A DNA stretch of 64,000 bases, taken from positions 62,001 through 126,000 of the IMG/VR virus record IMGVR_UViG_3300024502_000010. One strand, written 5' to 3'. Of this stretch, positions 9,733 to 63,307 are shown in pieces. The notes under the pieces are model-generated. The model saw only the letters and a program-made list of their open reading frames with translations, did not search any database and was not told the DNA's origin. Within the stretch, counting starts at the first letter, position 1, and each line of letters starts with the position of its first letter. Both the position numbers and the translations under genes were made by a program.

Positions 9733-10308
9733 TCAGTTTTTCCTCTTGATTTCGTTCAAACAATCATTCCATCCTTGATTATATCCCATCTCATCTTCTT
9801 CATATTCTAACTCATCAGGCAACCATTCTTCACCCACATAAGTATAATTTCCCTTTCGCACCTCATTAAACCAAAGTCCTTCAAGCAGACGACGAGTTTC
9901 ACCATCAGTAATACGAACCAGCATCATACCATCAGCAGGTTTCTTTTTCTTATACCAAATAACATCAGTTGGATATTCCAGACGATAATAATTCTCACCA
10001 TTATAAGAGACAACCTCATACTTCCCAGAGTTTTCAAGATACATTCTTGGTTGAGATTTATGTGTCTCAATCTCTTTGAGGAGTTCAAGTTTCTTTTGAA
10101 GCACTTTGATTTCTGCTTCTGTTTTTTCAATATCAGATTTGAAAGTCATAGATTTAAAATAAGGAGTAGCATCCATCACACCATCTTTGATTGCTTGTCT
10201 AAAAGCATCACGAAGTCCATTTGCGACTTCTTCGGGGTGTTGCTTCCTTGGTTCCCAGTTTGTTGATTGTCCTTCGTTGATTTCAGTTGGTTTCCAATCG
10301 TTATTCAT
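9733..10308 (-). CDS. Hypothetical protein (WLP...GWNDC family)
   Basis: 191-aa ORF directly downstream of the promoter at 10331. Confidence 0.7.
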   Translation of the reverse strand: MNNDWKPTEINEGQSTNWEPRKQHPEEVANGLRDAFRQAIKDGVMDATPYFKSMTFKSDIEKTEAEIKVLQKKLELLKEIETHKSQPRMYLENSGKYEVVSYNGENYYRLEYPTDVIWYKKKKPADGMMLVRITDGETRRLLEGLWFNEVRKGNYTYVGEEWLPDELEYEEDEMGYNQGWNDCLNEIKRKN

Positions 10309-10330
10309 TTAAGTGATTACTCATAAGGTC

Positions 10331-10389
10331 AGTATACAACAAAAAAGGTGCCCTGTAAAGGCACCTTGTTCCAGTTTGTAAAGTGTCCT
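10331..10389 (-). promoter_or_regulatory. Hairpin promoter cassette 2
   Basis: TTTACA (10354-10359)-N17-TATACT (10331-10336); -35 in the loop of an AAGGTGCC/GGCACCTT hairpin with T tract; palindrome GTTCCAGTTTGTAAAGTGTCCT 10368-10389. Confidence 0.8.
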
Positions 10390-11174
10390 TATACCACTCT
10401 CACTCGTTTAGTGATGTCTATTCCATTTTTCTTTTGATAATTTGAAAGAGCACCTGCGTTTGTGATAAATCCAGTTTCAAGACACATCCATCTTTGAGAA
10501 CTTGTTTTTTTACCTCCTATTTTTCCACCTCTTCTTCCATTTTCCGTCATTTTTTCTTTGCTTTGTCCGTGTATTCCAATTCCAAGTTCATATGTTCTAT
10601 TTCCACACTTTCTACCATTTTCAACCATCTGGTCTTTGGTTCTTCCGTGTATTCCTATTTTAAGTTCGTATGATTTTTTTCCTCCTTGTTTCCCATCTTC
10701 ACTCATCTGTTCTTTTGTTCTTCCGTGAACTCCAACACCAAGTTGATATACTCTTTCACCTCCTTTTTTTCCATAAATTTTACCAGTTCTTTTAGCATTT
10801 TCACTTCTTTGCTCTTTGGTTAGTGAATGAACTCCTAAACCAAGTTCATAACATTTATTTCCACTTTCACGCAAAACTTTTAGAGATACTTTACCACCAC
10901 AACTTTCATTTAGACACCATTTATCTGTATTAAAAAATGGTTTTATCAATCTTTCTTCAATTTCTTGTGCTTTCAACCAACCTTCATCCGTATAATCAAA
11001 AAATTGAAGTATTTGTTTCTTTGGTGTATAAAGTTCCCAACACCACTTGTTTGTTGTAGGAGAACCCCAGTATTCTTCGTTGAAGTATTTTTCCTTATGA
11101 ACTCCATAATAGTAATATGGAACTTCTTCAAAGGTAATTTTGTATATGTAAATTCTTGGACTTTGGTAAGTCAT
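10389..11174 (-). mobile_element. Free-standing GIY-YIG-like (Seg-type) homing endonuclease with repeated C-terminal modules
   Basis: N-terminal YIYKITF...YYYYG, conserved E (EIEERLI) and LN; four ~25-aa G-x-x-YELGIGIHGRTKEQM-like repeats; late promoter upstream. Confidence 0.75.
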
Positions 11175-11181
11175 CGTTATT

Positions 11182-11278
11182 CTACAGAAACCGCATTAGT
11201 ATTTATAATAGAAAAGGTGCCCGAAAGCACCTAATCTGTCCGTAGAGAATTGCGGTTTCTATAGACATTTTATTTATA
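11182..11278 (-). promoter_or_regulatory. Two T4-type late promoters, a 14-bp inverted repeat and a UUCG terminator upstream of the homing endonuclease
   Basis: TATAAATA at 11200-11207 and 11271-11278; arms 11182-11195 and 11251-11264; minus-strand AGGTGCT-TTCG-GGCACCT-TTT hairpin at about 11212-11232. Confidence 0.75.
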
Positions 11279-11280
11279 AG

Positions 11281-14200
11281 TCATTTTTTACTCCAACTAC
11301 CTCGTTCATATAATGCTTCTGTAAGTTTGTTATGCCATTCCAATCTGGCATCTCGTTGTTCTTCGTATTCTTCGTCAGTAGGAATGGGAGCAAGTTTTGC
11401 CCACCAACTACCATCAAGTTTCCATAAGGTATTGTCGGAACATAATACCATATCACCAGAGATTTGTATAGGTTTTCTTTCAGTCATCACAGGTTTCCTT
11501 TGCTATTTTTTTAATCCAAATAATATCAAGTTTGTTTGCCTTTTTTACTACTCTACCATATTTACTATAACGAAGTCCCCCACCATTTCCCAAATCAAAT
11601 ACAAAAGGACGGTCATCATCTGGATAGGTGGGAGAATTTCTAATTTTACCATAAAGAGTTGTATCGTCTCTGCGAACAACTTTGACGACATAATCAACAC
11701 ATTCTTCAAGATTAACAATTTCAGTCATCTTGCCCTCATCGCAGCAATCACAGCATCACGGGCACTTTTACCTTTTGCTCTACTCATAGGAAATCCACTA
11801 TTCATAAAAACCCAATCGTGTTCTCCATTCATTTTAGGAGAACACATCTTGAATTGATTGAGTAGAAATTCAAGGATTTCTGTGTCTGTTGGTTCAGTCA
11901 TTTTCTTCATCGGGTAGTTTTTCATTCAAATCAATACCATCTAAAACTTTATCAGACCATTTTAGCACATTCTCAATCAGTTTATCATTAACTTCTTTTT
12001 TCTTTTCCACAAACTTTTCAATCAGTTCATCATTAGGGTCGTTGAGGATTTGTTTTACTGGGTCTTTCTCTTCAATCATCAGTTTGATTTGTTTGAGATT
12101 ATCATAAAGTTCTTTATTGAAATCATAACATTCAGTCAAATGGTCTATGTTGTTGTCCTCAAAGTTAGTTTCCTCACGGATTTCCCAAGACAAACCATCC
12201 ATATCTGCTGCGGTTTCTGTGAGAAAGTATTCAAGTGTTTCAAGTAAATTCATTTTCTAATTACAGCAATTACTTTACGATTTGGATACTTCTCTACAAT
12301 TATATCACGAGCACTCTCATAATCAATAGCATCCTTTACGGTTTCATAATACACAGTTTTATCTGCATCATCCCAAGTTTGAACTTCGTAAGTCATTTCT
12401 CCTCCCAATTTGCTCTCACATCTTTATAAGGTTCTGCTTTTACTACATTATGAATAGTAGGAGTAGTGCTTGAAGCAGGTGGAATATAAGGAGTGCTATA
12501 AAGTGGTGGAGATTTACTCAAATACTCTTCAATAATATTACAAGACCATCCATCCTCATAGAATTGCTTACCATAGAAAACAGCATCTTCCTTATTTGGA
12601 AAGGAAGCAACATAAGTTTCGTTGTGATAGAGTGAATAAACTTTCATTTCACATTCTCCCTTGCTTTGCGAGCAGCATCATAAAGTTCCCGAAGTCGTTG
12701 AGACCTATCCTTTCGTTTATTGACTTGTTCTGGACTATTATACCACACACTATCAGTTCCGTGTAATGGGCAATCTGGATTGAGGTTTTTGCTATTGGAG
12801 GTCTTGGTTCCTATTTGAATGTAAGAACAGGTGCATTTAGTCATTTTACAGAACTCACAAATACAGGAACTTCACCACAAATGTTAGTTGCGGAATTAAT
12901 CACATTATAAGACTTCCTACATTCTATCACAATCTCATAAGATTTCAAGAACATCTCTCTGTCCTTTTGAGTATTGTAAGTATTCAGTAGTTCCATAGAA
13001 AGGAAATAACCAGTAATGATGAGAAGTGGAATGATGAAGATAAAGATAAAGGGTTTCATTTCACTCATAGTAGGACATATCATAACTACCTTCATTATAA
13101 CCCATTTGAAAGATTTCTTGGGCAAACTTCACAAAGGCATCAAAGTTTCCAGAATACTCCCAACCATCATTTTCATCCCAATCTTCTTCAAAGTGTTCTT
13201 TTACAAGTTTGATGACTTCTTCATCTAAAATCATAGTCATTTTTCTCCTGTTCTAAAACATCACGGGCACGGTCAGCAATCTGTCTCAAACTAATGCGAG
13301 GGTCATTATAAGATGTCGGAGTCCAATTATCACACCAACTATCAAGTTCAATAATAACTCGTTCTAATGCTGATTGAGTTTTAGTCATCACCAATCCAAC
13401 TCCACATAAATGCTCCACCCCAAATTATTAGGCAGATTATCTTTCAGGTATTCTAACATATAATCCTGAAAATCATAAGCAGTTGGAGAACATTCTTCAA
13501 TCAACACACCATACTCCAAATCCTCTTCGTGAATACTATATTTCACCCACACATCAACCACTCGTAGGTCAGCATAATTTACACCACCAAATCGTTCTGT
13601 GGAATTCTTGAGTTCTTCAAGTGCCTTTGTAGCAACCTCCTGAATGAGTGTGAGGTTCTTATTAAGTGTTTCGTTCATCGTATCCCCGCATCAAATAATT
13701 TTTTTAGTTCATGATAAACAAGTTTTAGTGTATTATCAGTTTCTAAATTTACATCTCTCAAAATCCAATAGAGTTCTTTTGCTTGTTGTTCTGTTAGTTC
13801 CAAGACATAAGATTTTTTGATTTCAATCATTTTCAATCTCCTCTACATTTACATAAGGAGCAGTTTTCCATTCACTCCATTCCTCACAATCATAAAGGAT
13901 GGGAGGACATAAATTACCAGAAGCATCAGTAGTAAAAATATGATACCGATACTGAATGTCTGGTTTCACTCCCAGTTCATTCTCAACGATACGAAGTTCA
14001 ATCATTTTCCAAGTTCCTTTTGAATACGATACTCACACCATTCTGTATGATTTTTAAGTTCTCCGTTGATTTGTGGGTCACTTATCTTACAATAAGAACA
14101 GCAGTAATAAGGATTACCACCACCAATAGGTTCTTTTGGATAGTCGTTATAATATTGGTTCATTTCACAAAATCTCCAATCACAGGAACTTCTCCACAAA

Positions 14201-50887: not shown

Positions 50888-53236
50888 TTATCTAATACCT
50901 AAGATATTAGCATTTCTTCTATTTGAACTTGACGAAGCACTGAAGGATGGAACTGATGGATTTGAACCACTTCCTCTTCCTCCTCCCATTCCACCTCCAG
51001 CAACTTTTGGCTTAGATGAAACAACTTTAGGTGCTGGTTTTGGTGTTGGGGTGATTGGTCTTGAGTTTGGAGATGTTTTACCTATCTTTGCCATTCTCAA
51101 GTCTCTTGCTCTCTTCGCCTCAGCATAACTTCCATAATATTTTCCATCCGAAGATGAATAGTATTTACCCATTGCCGCAGCACCAGATTGCTTTATTCTT
51201 GCCTCAGATGCTTTGTCGGCAGCATTTGCTTTATCTATTTGGTCATATGTACCAAACATTCTGGTTAATCCACGACCAACTCCACCAAGAAGTCCACCCC
51301 TATTCATAAATTCTTGATTTGCAGTTCTTACCTTAGCATTAGTTTCTCTTTCTCTTTGCTGTGGGGTAATTGAAATTGATAACTTTTTCTTTGCATTTGA
51401 ATCATTTACTGCTCTTGAATATCCATTAGGTCCAAGGCGTTCATTCATCATTTTTTTAATATTTTCTTCTTTCATTCCACGCCTTCTCATATCTTCCAAA
51501 TCACTAATAGCAGTGAGACGCATTTTTCTTGCGTTTAAAGTCTCCTCTCTGCCAGTAGAACCTTTTGGATCAAAGAAGTCTGCAATAGACTCCAACATTC
51601 CTTTGTTTCTTTCAGTTGCTCTTTGATAAGTTGGTTCTCCTCCTTTAAAAGACAAGTAAGCAACAAAAGGTCCATCAGGTCCCATCATAATTTTAGTTTT
51701 TGGTAGGTTCTTTTTATCTACATTTCCAAGACCACTACTCATCAAACCACCACCTTTACCACTATATCCTTTATTTCTGGCACCATACTTATCAACTTGT
51801 CCAGAAAGACCCTTTGCAAAATTAGAGGAGTATATAATATCCTTTCCTCTTTTTTGAGCAAAATATCTCATTCCACCGACATTAATTTCATTAATAGGAA
51901 TACTATCGGCACCCGTTCCTGCACCAAGGGTTTTTACTCCACCTTTAACAAGGATTGATTGTCTACCACCATAAGTTGTTCCATAACCAGCACCAAGAGG
52001 TGTTTTTACTCCTTTTCCGGATGAAAGTGCTCTTTGAACTCCTACTTGGTCTTCTATTCTCTTTAATCTTTGGTCTAAAGATAATCTTTTATTATCTTCA
52101 AGAACAGGATCTCTATAATTAGGATCTTCTCCAATCAATCCACCACCTACAGCATGAACTGCATGTCTTACAATTTTGGGGCGATTAGTTCCACCACCAG
52201 CAGAGTTCATTGCTTCAAGTGTGCTCACACCAAACTTCTGAACTGCTCCACGAGACATAACAAATTCACCGTCAGTAAGCATTGCTGGGACTTTATCAAT
52301 TCCCTTTGGACCAGAAATGCTTCCACCAAGTCCTTGAGTTATATTAGCAAGACCACCAGAAGCTAAAAATGCTGTAAATGGATTGAGTTGGGAAGATACT
52401 TCTGCTCCAGTTGACTTTAAAATACCTTTTAAGTCGGCAAGACCACCACCAGCAGCTTCCATTGTGGGAACTGACTGAGGTTCAGGAACTGCTATTTGTG
52501 GTGCTTCTCCATCACCCATGAATTTATTGATTGCAAGACCAGTTCCAACAGCAGCTGCACCGGCAACTCCAAGTTGAAGAAGACCACCGCGCAATCCACC
52601 AATTTTTCCACCACCAGCAAATACGGAGGCAATCCCCTTTCTTTTTAGTATTTGTCCAGTGGCAATTGCTTTTGCTAATCTTGCTGCAATTACAATAAGT
52701 CTGGTTGTTAACCCAACGGCAACTCCAGCAACTTTTCTTACAACTCTACCAAACCCAGTACCAAATAAAATATAACCAGCAACCAGAGATGGCCACCAAT
52801 CACTCAAAAATCTCATTATGGAGCGAATTTTGCTCCTATTTTTTTCGTCCGCAAACCAATTTAATAATAATATAAGTGCTCTACCAAGAAATACGGTAAC
52901 AAAAAATTGTATTATCTGGTCTAATATACTTTTAACTGGAGCAACAACAGATTGTGCTACATTCTTTACGGTTGCAAAAGATCTTTCCAGACCAAGTTCT
53001 ATACCCTGTCTTCTACTTCTTTCCTGACTTTTTCTTGTTTCATCAACATCTCTCTTTGTCTGAACATTTTGTTGAGAGAGAAGTTGAATGATATTTGTTA
53101 ATGATTTAGATATGTCCTGCAGGATGGCAGTGTCTGCAGGGGATGATATTAATTGTTGTTGAGGTTGAGCAGCAAAAGCAGAAGAACGAACCGTTGTCGT
53201 TCTACCCATCATTTTTTGTGCATTTACTGTTGCCAT
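50888..53236 (-). CDS. Baseplate hub/tape-measure-like protein
   Basis: Helical, Gly/Ala-rich; DKVPAMLTDGEFVMSRGAVQKFG; follows gp51. Confidence 0.55.
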   Translation of the reverse strand: MATVNAQKMMGRTTTVRSSAFAAQPQQQLISSPADTAILQDISKSLTNIIQLLSQQNVQTKRDVDETRKSQERSRRQGIELGLERSFATVKNVAQSVVAPVKSILDQIIQFFVTVFLGRALILLLNWFADEKNRSKIRSIMRFLSDWWPSLVAGYILFGTGFGRVVRKVAGVAVGLTTRLIVIAARLAKAIATGQILKRKGIASVFAGGGKIGGLRGGLLQLGVAGAAAVGTGLAINKFMGDGEAPQIAVPEPQSVPTMEAAGGGLADLKGILKSTGAEVSSQLNPFTAFLASGGLANITQGLGGSISGPKGIDKVPAMLTDGEFVMSRGAVQKFGVSTLEAMNSAGGGTNRPKIVRHAVHAVGGGLIGEDPNYRDPVLEDNKRLSLDQRLKRIEDQVGVQRALSSGKGVKTPLGAGYGTTYGGRQSILVKGGVKTLGAGTGADSIPINEINVGGMRYFAQKRGKDIIYSSNFAKGLSGQVDKYGARNKGYSGKGGGLMSSGLGNVDKKNLPKTKIMMGPDGPFVAYLSFKGGEPTYQRATERNKGMLESIADFFDPKGSTGREETLNARKMRLTAISDLEDMRRRGMKEENIKKMMNERLGPNGYSRAVNDSNAKKKLSISITPQQRERETNAKVRTANQEFMNRGGLLGGVGRGLTRMFGTYDQIDKANAADKASEARIKQSGAAAMGKYYSSSDGKYYGSYAEAKRARDLRMAKIGKTSPNSRPITPTPKPAPKVVSSKPKVAGGGMGGGRGSGSNPSVPSFSASSSSNRRNANILGIR

Positions 53237-62042: not shown

Positions 62043-62732
62043 TTATTCAATAGTGATGGAAGGTGCATCAACACACTCAGAACACCCTTCACGAGACCAA
62101 CCAAGTGCTTCAGACACTGCAGGAAACTGGCAAGTAAAGATGCAACGAACAAGTTCTGCAATTTCCATGTGTTCCTTCTGTGTACCATGAGCAGAACGAA
62201 GATCAATATAATGAATCCATGACCTTACAGAACCGGTCATATAGAGTCTTGTAGGCGTCGCTAAGGGCAGTACAAACCTTGCACACTCCTTTGCCACACC
62301 CTTCTCTAAAAGGCGGTTATAAAGGCGTAGAGACTGCTCAAAATGAACGCGGATATCTTCTGTCAGTGTCAGTTTCAGATAGTCGGGAATATCATCAATA
62401 GAGTTCTGACGGTTCTTTGTATCTTGGCGGCGCAGTTCAGGCAGAGGAATAGTGCTATTCAGAAGATTTGTATCAGCATATCGTTGCGAAAATTCTTGAT
62501 ATGTAAATGAACGATGGCGAAGAATCTGAGCTGCTAGTCCACGAGTAGTATTGATTTCAACAGTCATTGAAGCTTGTTCAAAGATACTCCAGTGTTGATG
62601 TTGGATGCAATACTTGAGAAGACCAGAAAACTTATCATTATCCTGATTAGCAGGATTACTTACCCGAGCACAATATGCCATATGCTTTTCTGCATCGGGA
62701 GTAACACTAATGAGTTTTACTTCTGGTTTCAT
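62043..62732 (-). CDS. thyX: Flavin-dependent thymidylate synthase
   Basis: HWSIFEQA, QILRHRSFTYQEFSQRY, KECAR.VLP, LR...TQKEH; start at 62732 or 62753. Confidence 0.96.
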   Translation of the reverse strand: MKPEVKLISVTPDAEKHMAYCARVSNPANQDNDKFSGLLKYCIQHQHWSIFEQASMTVEINTTRGLAAQILRHRSFTYQEFSQRYADTNLLNSTIPLPELRRQDTKNRQNSIDDIPDYLKLTLTEDIRVHFEQSLRLYNRLLEKGVAKECARFVLPLATPTRLYMTGSVRSWIHYIDLRSAHGTQKEHMEIAELVRCIFTCQFPAVSEALGWSREGCSECVDAPSITIE

Positions 62733-62742
62733 AAACTCAAAA

Positions 62743-62922
62743 TCATCGTACATCGTATTCATCTTCCTCGTCATAAAATACTTCGTCGTAGTCACTTAAA
62801 AAATTTTTAATTTCTTCATAGACAGGATCTTTAACCTCAGTCTCAGGTTCAATCTCTGCTTTTAAACAATCTACCAGAGACTCAAGGTTTCTGACAATAA
62901 GTTTAAGTTTTTCTCTATCCAT
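62743..62922 (-). CDS. Hypothetical acidic protein (MDREKLKLIVRNLESLVDCLK...)
   Basis: 59-aa ORF by manual translation, directly after the promoter at 62946. Confidence 0.7.
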   Translation of the reverse strand: MDREKLKLIVRNLESLVDCLKAEIEPETEVKDPVYEEIKNFLSDYDEVFYDEEDEYDVR

Positions 62923-62945
62923 TTTTTATAAACCTCGACAAAGGT

Positions 62946-62985
62946 ATTATAGACAAAAAAAGAGGTGGAGTCAAGTCCACCTCTT
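62946..62985 (-). promoter_or_regulatory. Terminator hairpin overlapping a sigma70-like promoter for the thyX-phoH operon
   Basis: AGAGGTGGA/TCCACCTCT stem + T7; TTGACT (62969-62974)-N17-TATAAT (62946-62951). Confidence 0.8.
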
Positions 62986-62988
62986 AAG

Positions 62989-63087
62989 TCATTTTGCTGC
63001 TACCAGAGTAGCAAGAGATGCTTTTTGACGCCTCTCTTCTTTTTGTTTTTGTTCTTTAATGAGTTGAAGAAAGTTTAGTTTTTTCAT
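62989..63087 (-). CDS. 32-aa basic peptide MKKLNFLQLIKEQKQKEERRQKASLATLVAAK
   Basis: ATG overlaps the DUF4278-like stop (TGATG) and the ORF ends at the terminator. Confidence 0.6.
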   Translation of the reverse strand: MKKLNFLQLIKEQKQKEERRQKASLATLVAAK

Positions 63088-63224
63088 CACTTATGCCCCT
63101 CCTTTACAAACTTAACACCACGATAGTTTTCGTTATACTGTTGGGGTTGTTGCATCATTTGCTGTTGATACTCAAGACGCTTTTGCTTGTCGTATTCAAC
63201 ACCGCGATAAACTACTTTTGACAT
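63087..63224 (-). CDS. DUF4278-like peptide (45 aa, two YRGV motifs)
   Basis: MSKVVYRGVEYD...ENYRGVKF; AGGAG RBS; directly downstream of the glutamine-II-like aptamer. Confidence 0.8.
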   Translation of the reverse strand: MSKVVYRGVEYDKQKRLEYQQQMMQQPQQYNENYRGVKFVKEGHK

Positions 63225-63256
63225 TAGGTTTTCTCCTTAGTTTTTAGGTTAAAGAG

Positions 63257-63307
63257 CGTTCCTTCAGTCGGCGTTTCCGTTCGCTATTTGCGAATAGCGA
63301 ATGAACG
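63257..63307 (-). ncRNA. Glutamine-II (Downstream-peptide)-like riboswitch, compact copy
   Basis: CGTTCA-TTCGCTATT(CGCA)AATAGCGAA-CGGAAAC-GCCGAC-TGAAG-GAACG: P1 CGTTC/GAACG, perfect 9-bp P2, CGG/CCG; upstream of DUF4278-like ORF. Confidence 0.8.

What the first reader, a model, noticed from the sequence alone, without database searches (positions are those of the whole stretch)
11172..11280. Two-late-promoter antisense/hairpin cassette controlling the homing endonuclease
Seen on the minus strand, in order: TATAAATA (11271-11278), arm CUAUAGAAACCGCA, UUCG terminator hairpin, second TATAAATA (11200-11207), complementary arm UGCGGUUUCUGUAG (14 bp, one G-U), 7 nt, AUG. Known: T4 homing endonucleases such as I-TevI are silenced on early read-through RNA by a hairpin over the initiation region and released by a late promoter. 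Unusual here: the extra upstream late promoter plus terminator would yield a separate ~60-nt RNA with ACCGCAA in an apparent loop, antisense to the 5' end of the endonuclease mRNA. That would be an RNA-OUT/type-I-antitoxin-like trans repressor (inference).
Basis: partly seen in the sequence, partly recalled or inferred. Interest (0 to 1): 0.68.

Follow-up and report, generated by a model that had tools for sequence, protein, structure and literature searches.

The report
Twin-promoter leader of a homing endonuclease
A mobile endonuclease gene in a T4-like cyanophage carries a portable, widely conserved control region that silences it until late infection with an RNA hairpin, and that also looks as if it encodes a roughly 55-base RNA able to pair with the start of the endonuclease message.

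Summary
On the minus strand, in order: TATAAATA (P1), a 15-nt 5' arm, a terminator hairpin (T1), a second TATAAATA (P2), the complementary 3' arm, 6 nt, then the ATG of a 261-aa homing-endonuclease-like ORF.

It is one member of a large family. I found 110 distinct cassettes in freshwater T4-like cyanophage contigs and in the isolates S-SRM01 and B3, in front of several unrelated endonuclease genes.

- **Hairpin.** The arms differ between cassettes but always pair (cognate -22 against -9 kcal/mol non-cognate). This strongly supports the T4 I-TevI-type "late promoter inside an inhibitory hairpin" control, already noted for cyanophage-like endonucleases in 2009.
- **What appears undescribed.** P1 ([A/C]TAAATA) is present in 110/110 cassettes, 5-6 nt before a covarying local hairpin (H1). 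P1 and P2 share the same initiation context. All 110 predicted P1-to-T1 RNAs (median 53 nt) fold as two hairpins. The H1 loop is complementary to the first bases of the late mRNA.

A discrete antisense RNA acting in trans is therefore a well-founded prediction, but no expression data exist. A cis-only reading remains a serious rival, because upstream ORFs usually stop inside P1. The type-I-antitoxin analogy is not supported.

The parts
11281..11490 (-). Upstream 69-aa ORF. Its TGA stop (11283-11281) lies 2 nt before P1.
   Evidence: In the family, the upstream ORF stops inside or next to the P1 motif in 73 of 100 cassettes.
11271..11278 (-). P1, the upstream late-promoter motif TATAAATA.
   Evidence: [A/C]TAAATA is present in 110/110 cassettes, against 6% of control sites. 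It has the same downstream context as P2. The same motif variants precede structural genes of this phage.
11211..11266 (-). Predicted small RNA of about 56 nt: P1 start (G 11266) through H1 and T1 to the U-tract.
   Evidence: Two-hairpin fold at -17.8 kcal/mol, z = -3.7, 0/200 shuffles. All 110 family members fold as two hairpins, median length 53 nt. Transcription itself is inferred.
11238..11266 (-). H1, a local 5' hairpin. It uses the first half of the 5' arm. Its loop (11257-11247) carries AAACCGCAAUU, complementary to the first bases of the late mRNA.
   Evidence: The family has 49 distinct outer stems. Cognate pairing is -5.6 against -2.6 kcal/mol non-cognate, permutation sd 0.18.
11251..11265 (-). 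5' arm of the long-range helix (15 nt).
   Evidence: Covariation.
11211..11232 (-). T1, an intrinsic-terminator-like hairpin (7 bp, UUCG loop) plus U-tract.
   Evidence: In the family it is 98.5% paired and all 6 pairs covary.
11200..11207 (-). P2, a late-promoter motif TATAAATA lying between the arms. Predicted start is G 11194.
   Evidence: Invariant in alignments A1 and A2.
11181..11195 (-). 3' arm. It makes up most of the 20-nt late 5' UTR and ends 6 nt before the AUG.
   Evidence: It is the only good match to the 5' arm in the 64-kb window.
10389..11174 (-). 261-aa homing-endonuclease-like ORF, with a GIY-YIG-like N-terminal motif (by eye) and NUMOD3-like repeats.
   Evidence: phrog_314 'homing endonuclease', E = 2e-6. 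A relative with 37% identity to the C-terminal half has Pfam NUMOD3. Presence/absence polymorphism. No Pfam, NCBIfam or PDB hit for the ORF itself.
10331..10388 (-). 3' module: conserved box, terminator T2 (10367-10345), and a sigma-70-like promoter (TTTACA-17-TATACT, 10359-10331) that would restart early transcription of the next gene.
   Evidence: Conserved downstream of most cassettes.

Best explanation
This is a self-contained, mobile expression cassette for a homing-endonuclease gene, with layered control.

1. **Insulation.** Early read-through transcription from the upstream genes is stopped at T1. A terminator plus sigma-70-like promoter at the 3' end restarts transcription for the next gene.
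2. **Silencing in cis.** Any transcript that reads through T1 carries both arms. They form a 15-bp helix covering positions -7 to -21 of a leader only about 20 nt long, so the endonuclease is not translated.
3. **Late release.** P2 lies between the arms. Late mRNA therefore starts at the 3' arm, lacks the 5' arm and is open. This is the T4 I-TevI/segB/mobE logic.
4. **Predicted small RNA.** P1 starts a second late transcript exactly at the base of hairpin H1, and it ends at T1. This gives a stable RNA of about 55 nt with two hairpins. Its loop and 5' strand are complementary to the first 14-15 nt of the P2 mRNA.
5. **Proposed trans action.** That RNA pairs in trans, the mRNA 5' end meeting the H1 loop and the helix then extending by strand displacement. 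It recreates the inhibitory helix on part of the late mRNA and so caps endonuclease output as genome copies multiply.

Steps 1-3 are inferred from sequence and strongly supported by covariation. Step 4 is a prediction from conserved motifs. Step 5 is inference.
For: **Family and helix**
- 110 distinct cassettes share the layout.
- Arm pairing is cognate -22.1 against non-cognate -8.9 kcal/mol, permutation sd 0.36.
- On an unfitted MAFFT alignment the covariation score is 0.401 against 0.181, 0/500 shuffles, and it collapses when partners are slid.
- The predicted late 5' UTR has a median of 20 nt, and 74% of positions -20 to +3 are paired in the read-through fold.

**P1 as a promoter**
- P1 is present in 110/110 cassettes, against 13/207 control sites.
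- P1 is absent from an endonuclease-free allele of one insertion site.
- P1 and P2 share the context nTAAT-(G/A)-C after the motif, which other TATAAATA sites lack.
- Both the ATAAATA and CTAAATA variants sit 21-52 nt upstream of large structural ORFs in this same window.
- The published cyanophage late promoter is NATAAATA (PMC2984593).

**The predicted RNA**
- All 110 predicted RNAs fold as two hairpins. H1 begins at nt 1 in 98/110, and the predicted +1 is a purine in 108/110.
- H1 has 49 different stems, with cognate pairing better than non-cognate.
- T1 covaries.
- For the window, the predicted RNA plus late mRNA cofold at -38.6, against -23.8 kcal/mol for the two apart.
- Two 'simple' cassettes that lack T1 also lack P1.
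Against: - There are no expression data of any kind: no start sites, 3' ends or RNA abundance for any member.
- The cis helix alone explains the arm covariation.
- Upstream ORFs stop inside the P1 motif in 73/100 cassettes. Part of P1's conservation could therefore reflect a stop-codon or junction role.
- Many leaders have no clear Shine-Dalgarno sequence, and in some an AGGAG/GAG lies outside the helix. Repression by pairing is plausible but not certain.
- Firing an activator (P2) and a repressor (P1) from the same promoter class at the same time needs a rationale, such as dosage buffering, that is only argued here.
- Co-resident cassettes have different arms, but not significantly more different than random pairs.
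Confidence: 0.42

Rival explanations
1. Cis-only control. The cassette works purely like T4 I-TevI, segB or mobE: T1 plus the long-range helix silence read-through RNA, and P2 releases the gene late. The P1 motif is conserved as the left junction of the mobile unit and as a source of stop codons. These end upstream translation about 11 nt before the helix so that ribosomes do not melt it. Any RNA made from P1 would be a by-product without a trans role. H1 and T1 would simply form a stable double-hairpin 3' end for upstream messages.
For: - Upstream ORFs terminate at offsets -3, 0 or +4 of the motif in 73/100 cassettes.
- The cis mechanism is experimentally established for T4-type endonucleases (PMC2988022).
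- Hairpins with TATAAATA were already seen upstream of cyanophage-like endonucleases (PMC2677866).
- The S-PM2 F-CphI leader manages with only a hairpin plus TATAAATA.
Against: - The conserved positions are those of the promoter consensus: [A/C]TAAATA is invariant, while the base that completes the second stop codon varies (A, T, C or G). Only two reading frames are closed by the motif.
- The fixed 5-6 nt spacing to the H1 base, the purine at the predicted +1, and the same initiation context as P2 are not explained.
- H1 competes with the cis helix, yet it is conserved with covariation.
- T4-type late promoters need only this motif, so an exact TATAAATA would be expected to fire.
Confidence: 0.33
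2. The P1 RNA exists but acts positively or on another target. For example, pairing at the extreme 5' end might protect the late mRNA from 5'-end-dependent RNase E/J decay, or the RNA might titrate read-through transcripts.
For: The pairing geometry is the same as in the best explanation. Duplex formation protecting mRNA from RNase E during cyanophage infection has been reported for other RNAs; this is from my own knowledge and was not checked here.
Against: - The same 3' arm is the silencing partner in the cis helix, so pairing most simply means 'off'.
- The duplex leaves only 5-13 nt of leader free.
- No other target exists in the 64-kb window.
Confidence: 0.1
3. A co-transcriptional switch. 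H1 and the long-range helix are alternative folds of one read-through or P1-initiated transcript. The choice between them, set by upstream translation, terminator efficiency or a factor, tunes how much full-length RNA is translatable.
For: - H1 and the long helix are mutually exclusive and both covary.
- The H1 loop offers a toehold for the 3' arm.
- The upstream stop codon sits a fixed short distance before H1.
Against: - The long helix is far more stable. In the window the read-through leader folds at -43.9 in its minimum-energy fold, against -18.4 kcal/mol when only H1 and T1 are formed.
- I found no antiterminator alternative to T1.
- No ligand- or factor-binding motif was identified, and P2 makes such a switch unnecessary for expression.
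Confidence: 0.1
4. Chance arrangement of AT-rich motifs and a fortuitous inverted repeat.
For: TATAAATA is not enriched in the window as a whole.
Against: 110 cassettes share the layout. Shuffle, permutation and slide controls all reject chance.
Confidence: 0.01

Closest known systems
T4-type hairpin / late-promoter translational control (I-TevI, I-TevII, I-TevIII, segB, Aeh1 mobE; also T4 e, soc, 49). Review: PMC2988022.
   Same: An inhibitory helix over the initiation region forms only on transcripts from upstream promoters. A TATAAATA late promoter lies inside the helix, so late mRNA is open. The target is a homing-endonuclease gene embedded in an early transcription unit.
   Different: Here an intrinsic terminator sits inside the loop. 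A second late promoter lies upstream of the 5' arm. A covarying local hairpin (H1) is present. The whole unit is a conserved portable module shared by unrelated endonuclease genes. No operator or autorepression evidence was found.
Hairpins with TATAAATA upstream of free-standing endonucleases in cyanophage-like 'fractured gene' loci (Dassa et al. 2009, PMC2677866).
   Same: Same kind of phage and gene. They report a hairpin with two complementary conserved motifs and a late-promoter element in the 5' UTR, including freshwater samples.
   Different: In the passages I read, that paper does not describe an upstream second promoter, the internal terminator, H1, or a discrete small RNA.
IS10 RNA-OUT / RNA-IN antisense control (from my own knowledge).
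   Same: A small stem-loop RNA whose loop is complementary to the extreme 5' end of a mobile-element mRNA and whose pairing covers the initiation region. Output would be limited as copy number rises.
   Different: RNA-OUT is read from the opposite strand across the same DNA. Here both RNAs are read from the same strand, from tandem promoters, and complementarity comes from an inverted repeat. No experimental evidence exists here.
PeSL composite terminator/early-promoter cassettes of T4-like phages (PMC2839356, PMC4122927).
   Same: The 3' end of the cassette is a stem-loop fused to a sigma-70-like promoter, in a hyperplastic region of small ORFs. Conserved regulatory motifs flank a variable ORF. 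One chimeric cassette (L034) shows recombination within the conserved core.
   Different: The 5' module uses late promoters rather than early ones and carries the antisense arms. PeSL-mediated mini-circle exchange was not tested here.
Short regulatory RNA from a phage late promoter stopped at a nearby terminator (StxS from PR'-tR' of Stx phages, PMC7547250).
   Same: A late promoter followed closely by a terminator yields a short RNA that has a regulatory role of its own.
   Different: That case involves a different phage type, sigma-70 with Q antitermination, and host targets reached via Hfq. I read only its abstract.
CfrI antisense RNA of cyanophage S-PM2 (Millard et al. 2010, cited in PMC2984593).
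   Same: An RNA complementary to a homing-endonuclease message in a T4-like cyanophage.
   Different: CfrI is about 225 nt, is read from the opposite strand, and spans the endonuclease gene and psbA. The S-PM2 endonuclease leader has only a hairpin plus TATAAATA, with no arms and no P1.

Membership tests
T4-type hairpin/late-promoter translational control | A stable helix sequesters the translation initiation region on transcripts from upstream promoters. | tested here: met
   A 15-bp helix covers -7 to -21 of the leader. In the family, 74% of -20 to +3 is paired. Covariation. Caveat: there is no clear Shine-Dalgarno sequence, and repression itself was not measured.
T4-type hairpin/late-promoter translational control | A late promoter is placed inside the helix, so late transcripts lack the 5' arm. 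| tested here: met
   P2 TATAAATA lies between the arms and is invariant in A1 and A2. The predicted start is at the first bases of the 3' arm. Start sites were not mapped.
T4-type hairpin/late-promoter translational control | Demonstrated early repression and late translation. | not testable with these tools
   Needs infection time courses or reporters.
RNA-OUT-like antisense RNA control | A discrete, stable small RNA with its own promoter and terminator. | tested here: inconclusive
   The promoter motif, 5' hairpin and terminator are all conserved, but there are no expression data.
RNA-OUT-like antisense RNA control | The antisense loop is complementary to the 5' end of the target mRNA, and the pairing reaches the initiation region. 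| tested here: met
   The H1 loop and 5' strand are complementary to nt 1-14 of the predicted late mRNA. This holds across the family.
RNA-OUT-like antisense RNA control | The antisense RNA is encoded on the opposite strand, overlapping its target. | tested here: not met
   Both RNAs are on the minus strand, from tandem promoters 71 nt apart. So it may work like RNA-OUT, but it is not a member of that family.
Type I toxin-antitoxin | The target encodes a small toxic (usually membrane) peptide, and the antitoxin RNA is unstable relative to the toxin mRNA. | tested here: not met
   The target is a 261-aa endonuclease-like ORF. RNA stabilities are not testable here.
PeSL-type composite terminator/promoter cassette | A stem-loop joined to a sigma-70-like early promoter between variable ORFs. 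| tested here: met
   This applies to the 3' module only: T2 at 10367-10345 with TTTACA-17-TATACT at 10359-10331. It is conserved after most cassettes.
PeSL-type composite terminator/promoter cassette | Recombination at the motif generates insertions, deletions or exchanges. | tested here: inconclusive
   There is insertion polymorphism and one chimera with mismatched arms (L034). The breakpoints were not analysed systematically.
GIY-YIG / NUMOD3 free-standing homing endonuclease | Recognisable nuclease and DNA-binding domains. | tested here: inconclusive
   The ORF matches phrog_314 'homing endonuclease' at E = 2e-6. Its C-terminal half is homologous to a protein with Pfam NUMOD3. Pfam, NCBIfam and the PDB sequence search gave nothing for the ORF itself. 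The AlphaFold model of the N-terminal domain had low confidence.
GIY-YIG / NUMOD3 free-standing homing endonuclease | Patchy presence or absence between related genomes. | tested here: met
   The same flanking genes occur with and without the cassette (L007 against L044; window against L050).
Any Rfam family | A match to a curated covariance model. | tested here: not met
   No meaningful hit over 10200-11500.

The most novel reading that the evidence does not exclude
Freshwater T4-like cyanophages carry a family of dozens of mutually orthogonal small-RNA/mRNA pairs. Each homing-endonuclease cassette encodes, in tandem on the same strand, its own late-expressed antisense RNA of about 55 nt (P1-H1-T1). 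That RNA pairs with the 5' end of its own late mRNA through a loop-to-5'-end contact and limits endonuclease output as phage genomes multiply. The recognition segment diversifies, with compensating changes, so that the several cassettes in one genome do not cross-regulate. As far as I know this would be the first trans-acting regulatory RNA of a homing endonuclease, and a natural library of orthogonal riboregulators.
Probability: 0.33. Interest if true: 0.8.

Novelty: new variant of a known kind. Interest (0 to 1): 0.62.

Why it matters
Homing endonucleases must be expressed late and sparingly to spread without harming their host phage. The known solution in T4 is a hairpin opened by a late promoter.

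This cassette shows that solution packaged as a portable module: insulator, timer, and restart promoter for the neighbouring gene. Unrelated endonuclease genes share the module.

It also adds a conserved element with all the sequence hallmarks of a small antisense RNA gene. If that RNA is real, it would be a new kind of dosage control for selfish genes in phages. It would be a rare predicted trans-acting RNA in T4-like phages. It would also supply 60 or more naturally co-evolved, apparently orthogonal RNA-RNA pairs. The hypothesis is directly testable because cultured isolates carry several cassettes (S-SRM01, at least 5; B3/B23).

Tried and rejected
- **Leader peptide.** A short ORF starts at the ATG between P1 and the arm in the window. 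Rejected: the ATG is absent from several cassettes, the reading frame differs between near-identical leaders, and the predicted P1 start lies after it.
- **P1 as a native promoter of the insertion site.** Rejected: an endonuclease-free allele (L044/L045) has no such motif. In the window and L007, homology extends at least 8 nt to the left of P1.
- **Plus-strand promoter-like and terminator-like hits** at 11181-11209 and 11240-11255. Judged by-products of the palindromic TTATAA and of H1's complement. The -35 part lies in the variable arm.
- **Rfam.** Nothing relevant.
- **PDB sequence search, Pfam and NCBIfam** for the endonuclease itself: nothing.
- **AlphaFold model.** Mean pLDDT 58.7, with the N-terminal domain below 45, so no fold search was run.
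- **Covariance-model realignment for H1.** It gave only 60% paired cells, because H1 geometry differs between subtypes. I relied instead on per-sequence folds and the cognate versus non-cognate test.
- **Orthogonality of co-resident cassettes.** The direction is suggestive (1 of 46 strong cross pairs, against 8% overall) but not significant.
- **Diversifying selection on the arms.** Arm-core diversity (0.29-0.38 per site) roughly equals third-codon-position diversity (0.28), so the test is inconclusive.
- **One script failed** because its regular expression was too strict. It was redone.

Full report
**1. What is in the window**

Read on the minus strand, a 69-aa ORF ends with TGA at 11283-11281. 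The following elements come next:
- TATAAATA (P1, 11278-11271), then five bases.
- A 15-nt arm (11265-11251) and an 18-nt spacer.
- The hairpin AGGUGCU-UUCG-GGCACCU with a U-tract (T1, 11232 to about 11211).
- A second TATAAATA (P2, 11207-11200), then four bases.
- The complementary arm (11195-11181), then six bases.
- The ATG (11174) of a 261-aa ORF that ends at 10389.

The leader folds into the long helix enclosing T1 at -36.6 kcal/mol, with z = -6.0 against shuffles. The simple scan also calls T1 and a second terminator, T2, after the ORF.

TATAAATA is not enriched in the window as a whole (6 found, 5.8 expected). The case against chance therefore rests on conservation, not on motif counts.

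**2. The gene**
- The ORF matches PHROG 314, 'homing endonuclease', at E = 2e-6.
- Its N-terminus has a GIY-YIG-like pattern by eye.
- Its C-terminal half is homologous to proteins that carry Pfam NUMOD3.
- Paralogues in phage S-SRM01 are annotated as NUMOD3 proteins.
- Pfam, NCBIfam and a PDB profile search gave nothing for the ORF itself.
- The AlphaFold model was poor in the N-terminal domain.
- The gene is present or absent between otherwise related loci.

I treat it as a probable free-standing homing endonuclease.

The phage is a T4-like cyanophage. Its closest isolates are the freshwater Kyanoviridae S-SRM01 and B3/B23. These encode the T4-type late-transcription accessory protein.

**3. 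The leader is a family**

Three searches recovered the same architecture again and again:
- Relatives of the protein in IMG/VR.
- A scan of every TATAAATA in the fetched loci.

Together they gave 110 distinct cassettes. They precede at least several unrelated N-terminal types of endonuclease-like ORF. In S-SRM01 these include genes annotated HNH and NUMOD3.

A covariance model built from 64 of the cassettes finds exactly one copy in the window. It finds five in the first 100 kb of S-SRM01.

**4. The long-range helix is real and selected**

The arms differ between cassettes (64 distinct versions) but pair in every one, over 10-17 uninterrupted bp.
- The cognate arm duplex energy averages -22.1 kcal/mol. 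Non-cognate combinations average -8.9, with a permutation sd of 0.36.
- On a plain MAFFT alignment not fitted to any structure, the arms plus T1 give a covariation score of 0.401 against 0.181. None of 500 shuffles reached it, and the signal collapses when partners are slid.
- The predicted late 5' UTR is only 17-25 nt. About three quarters of positions -20 to +3 are paired in the read-through fold.

This is the arrangement established experimentally for T4 I-TevI, I-TevII/III, segB and Aeh1 mobE (PMC2988022). Hairpins with TATAAATA were already reported upstream of endonucleases in cyanophage-like metagenomic loci (PMC2677866). This part is therefore a new member of a known kind.

**5. P1 is part of the cassette and looks like a promoter**
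- **Presence.** [A/C]TAAATA occurs in 110/110 cassettes: 83 as NATAAATA and 27 as NCTAAATA. Only 13 of 207 other TATAAATA sites have a TAAATA at the same distance.
- **Invariance.** TAAATA is invariant in both alignments.
- **Consensus.** NATAAATA is the published cyanophage late-promoter consensus (PMC2984593).
- **Use in this phage.** In this window both variants sit 21-52 nt upstream of large structural ORFs, with a 17:5 bias towards the coding strand.
- **Not native to the site.** An endonuclease-free allele of one insertion site has no such motif (L044 against L007).
- **Shared context.** P1 and P2 have the same context after the motif, nTAAT-(G/A)-C. Other TATAAATA sites lack it.

**6. 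The predicted P1 transcript**

I took the start as the sixth base after the motif. This is the T4 rule, from my own knowledge. I took the end as the T1 U-tract.
- All 110 predicted RNAs (46-69 nt, median 53) fold into exactly two hairpins.
- The first hairpin (H1) begins at nucleotide 1 in 98 of them.
- The first base is a purine in 108.
- H1 pairs the first half of the 5' arm with the spacer. Its loop exposes the second half of the arm.
- There are 49 different outer stems.
- Cognate H1 strands pair better than non-cognate ones: -5.6 against -2.6 kcal/mol, permutation sd 0.18.
- T1 is paired in 98.5% of cells, and all six pairs covary.

In the window the RNA (11266-11211) folds at -17.8 kcal/mol, z = -3.7. 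Its loop, AAACCGCAAUU, is complementary to the first bases of the P2 mRNA. The two RNAs cofold at -38.6 kcal/mol, against -23.8 apart. No other site in the 64 kb matches the arm.

Two 'simple' cassettes with arms and P2 but no T1 also lack P1. The marine S-PM2 endonuclease leader has only a hairpin plus TATAAATA.

**7. Interpretation**

The core, which I hold with high confidence, is a portable cassette that does four things:
- It insulates the endonuclease gene from early transcription at T1.
- It silences read-through RNA in cis through the arms.
- It releases the gene late from P2.
- It restarts early transcription for the neighbour through a stem-loop fused to a sigma-70-like promoter (TTTACA-17-TATACT). 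This resembles the PeSL elements of other T4-like phages (PMC2839356, PMC4122927).

The extension, held with moderate confidence, is that P1-H1-T1 is a small-RNA gene. Its product would pair in trans with the 5' end of the late mRNA. The topology is that of IS10 RNA-OUT/RNA-IN (my own knowledge), except that both RNAs come from the same strand. The most economical effect is repression, because the same pairing is the 'off' state in cis. This would buffer endonuclease output against rising genome copy number.

**8. Why I remain cautious**
- No transcript has been mapped for any member.
- The upstream ORF stops at offsets -3, 0 or +4 of the P1 motif in 73 of 100 cassettes. P1 may therefore be partly conserved as a junction or stop element that keeps ribosomes off the helix.
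- Against that reading, the invariant positions are those of the promoter consensus rather than of the stop codons. It also leaves the spacing, the purine start, the context shared with P2, and H1 unexplained.
- Orthogonality of co-resident cassettes (cross -7.6 against cognate -21.9 kcal/mol) is in the expected direction but is not significantly beyond chance.
- Arm-core diversity about equals third-codon-position diversity, so there is no clear signal of diversifying selection.
- The central part of the leader is about four times more conserved than third codon positions. I cannot explain this.

**9. Verdict**

The I-TevI-type reading is strongly supported but already known in kind. The small antisense RNA is a well-founded and, as far as I could find, undescribed prediction. 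It is not in Rfam, nor in the S-SRM01 paper or the two reviews I read. The toxin-antitoxin analogy fails.

Noticed in passing
window 10331-10388 (-); the same region after the stop codon in most loci: A conserved 3' module follows the endonuclease gene: a GGACACTT...AAACTGGAACA box, terminator T2, then a sigma-70-like promoter whose -35 lies in the T2 loop. It is PeSL-like and would restart early transcription. The T1 and T2 stems are near-identical direct repeats flanking the ORF.
   Followed up: partly
L034:300-408: A natural chimera. Its 5' arm is of one cassette type and its 3' arm of another, so the arms do not pair. It sits in front of an intact 251-aa NUMOD3 ORF. This suggests recombination within the conserved core.
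   Followed up: partly
L018:1879-2003, L094:934-1050, L120:3123-3239: A partial tandem duplication of the P2 region (TTATAAAC followed a few bases later by TTATAAATA).
   Followed up: no
window 11279-11287 (-) and L007 about 1885-1900: The bases just before P1 read aaaATGACT, the same as the start of the endonuclease ORF (ATGACTTA) and of many neighbouring genes (ATGACTGA). This may be a footprint of recombination at gene starts.
   Followed up: partly
L240 (S-SRM01 50001-100000): 1247-1347 and 12406-12511: One cassette overlaps the annotated start of CDS 51291-51992, so that start is probably mis-set. Another precedes a gene annotated 'translation initiation factor 2' (62515-63273), which is more likely a repeat-rich endonuclease.
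   Followed up: no
L156 (+ strand, P2 near 2085) and L035 (+ strand, P2 near 1624): A simpler leader type: 12-13-bp arms around a TATAAATA, with no internal terminator and no upstream P1 motif.
   Followed up: partly
L241:690-765 (S-PM2, upstream of F-CphI): The marine S-PM2 endonuclease leader has a terminator-like hairpin directly followed by TATAAATA, but no arms, H1 or P1.
   Followed up: partly
window, minus strand: 54183, 36453, 31716, 25152, 22181, 20896, 16781: [A/C]TAAATA motifs lie 21-52 nt upstream of large, mostly structural, ORFs. There are 17 on the coding strand against 5 on the other. They are likely the late promoters of this phage, including the CTAAATA variant.
   Followed up: partly
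type-A cassettes, e.g. window 11208-11247: The central leader (H1 3' strand, linker, T1, U-tract) differs by only 0.075 per site between cassettes, while adjacent third codon positions differ by 0.28. This primary-sequence conservation goes beyond what the structure requires and is unexplained. A protein-binding site is one possibility.
   Followed up: no
PMC8557907 (S-SRM01 paper), ORF320 in psbA: The endonuclease splitting psbA is described as flanked by 93 bp and 105 bp of non-coding DNA. Those are about the sizes of this cassette's 5' and 3' modules, so it may be a free-standing cassette rather than intron-borne.
   Followed up: no
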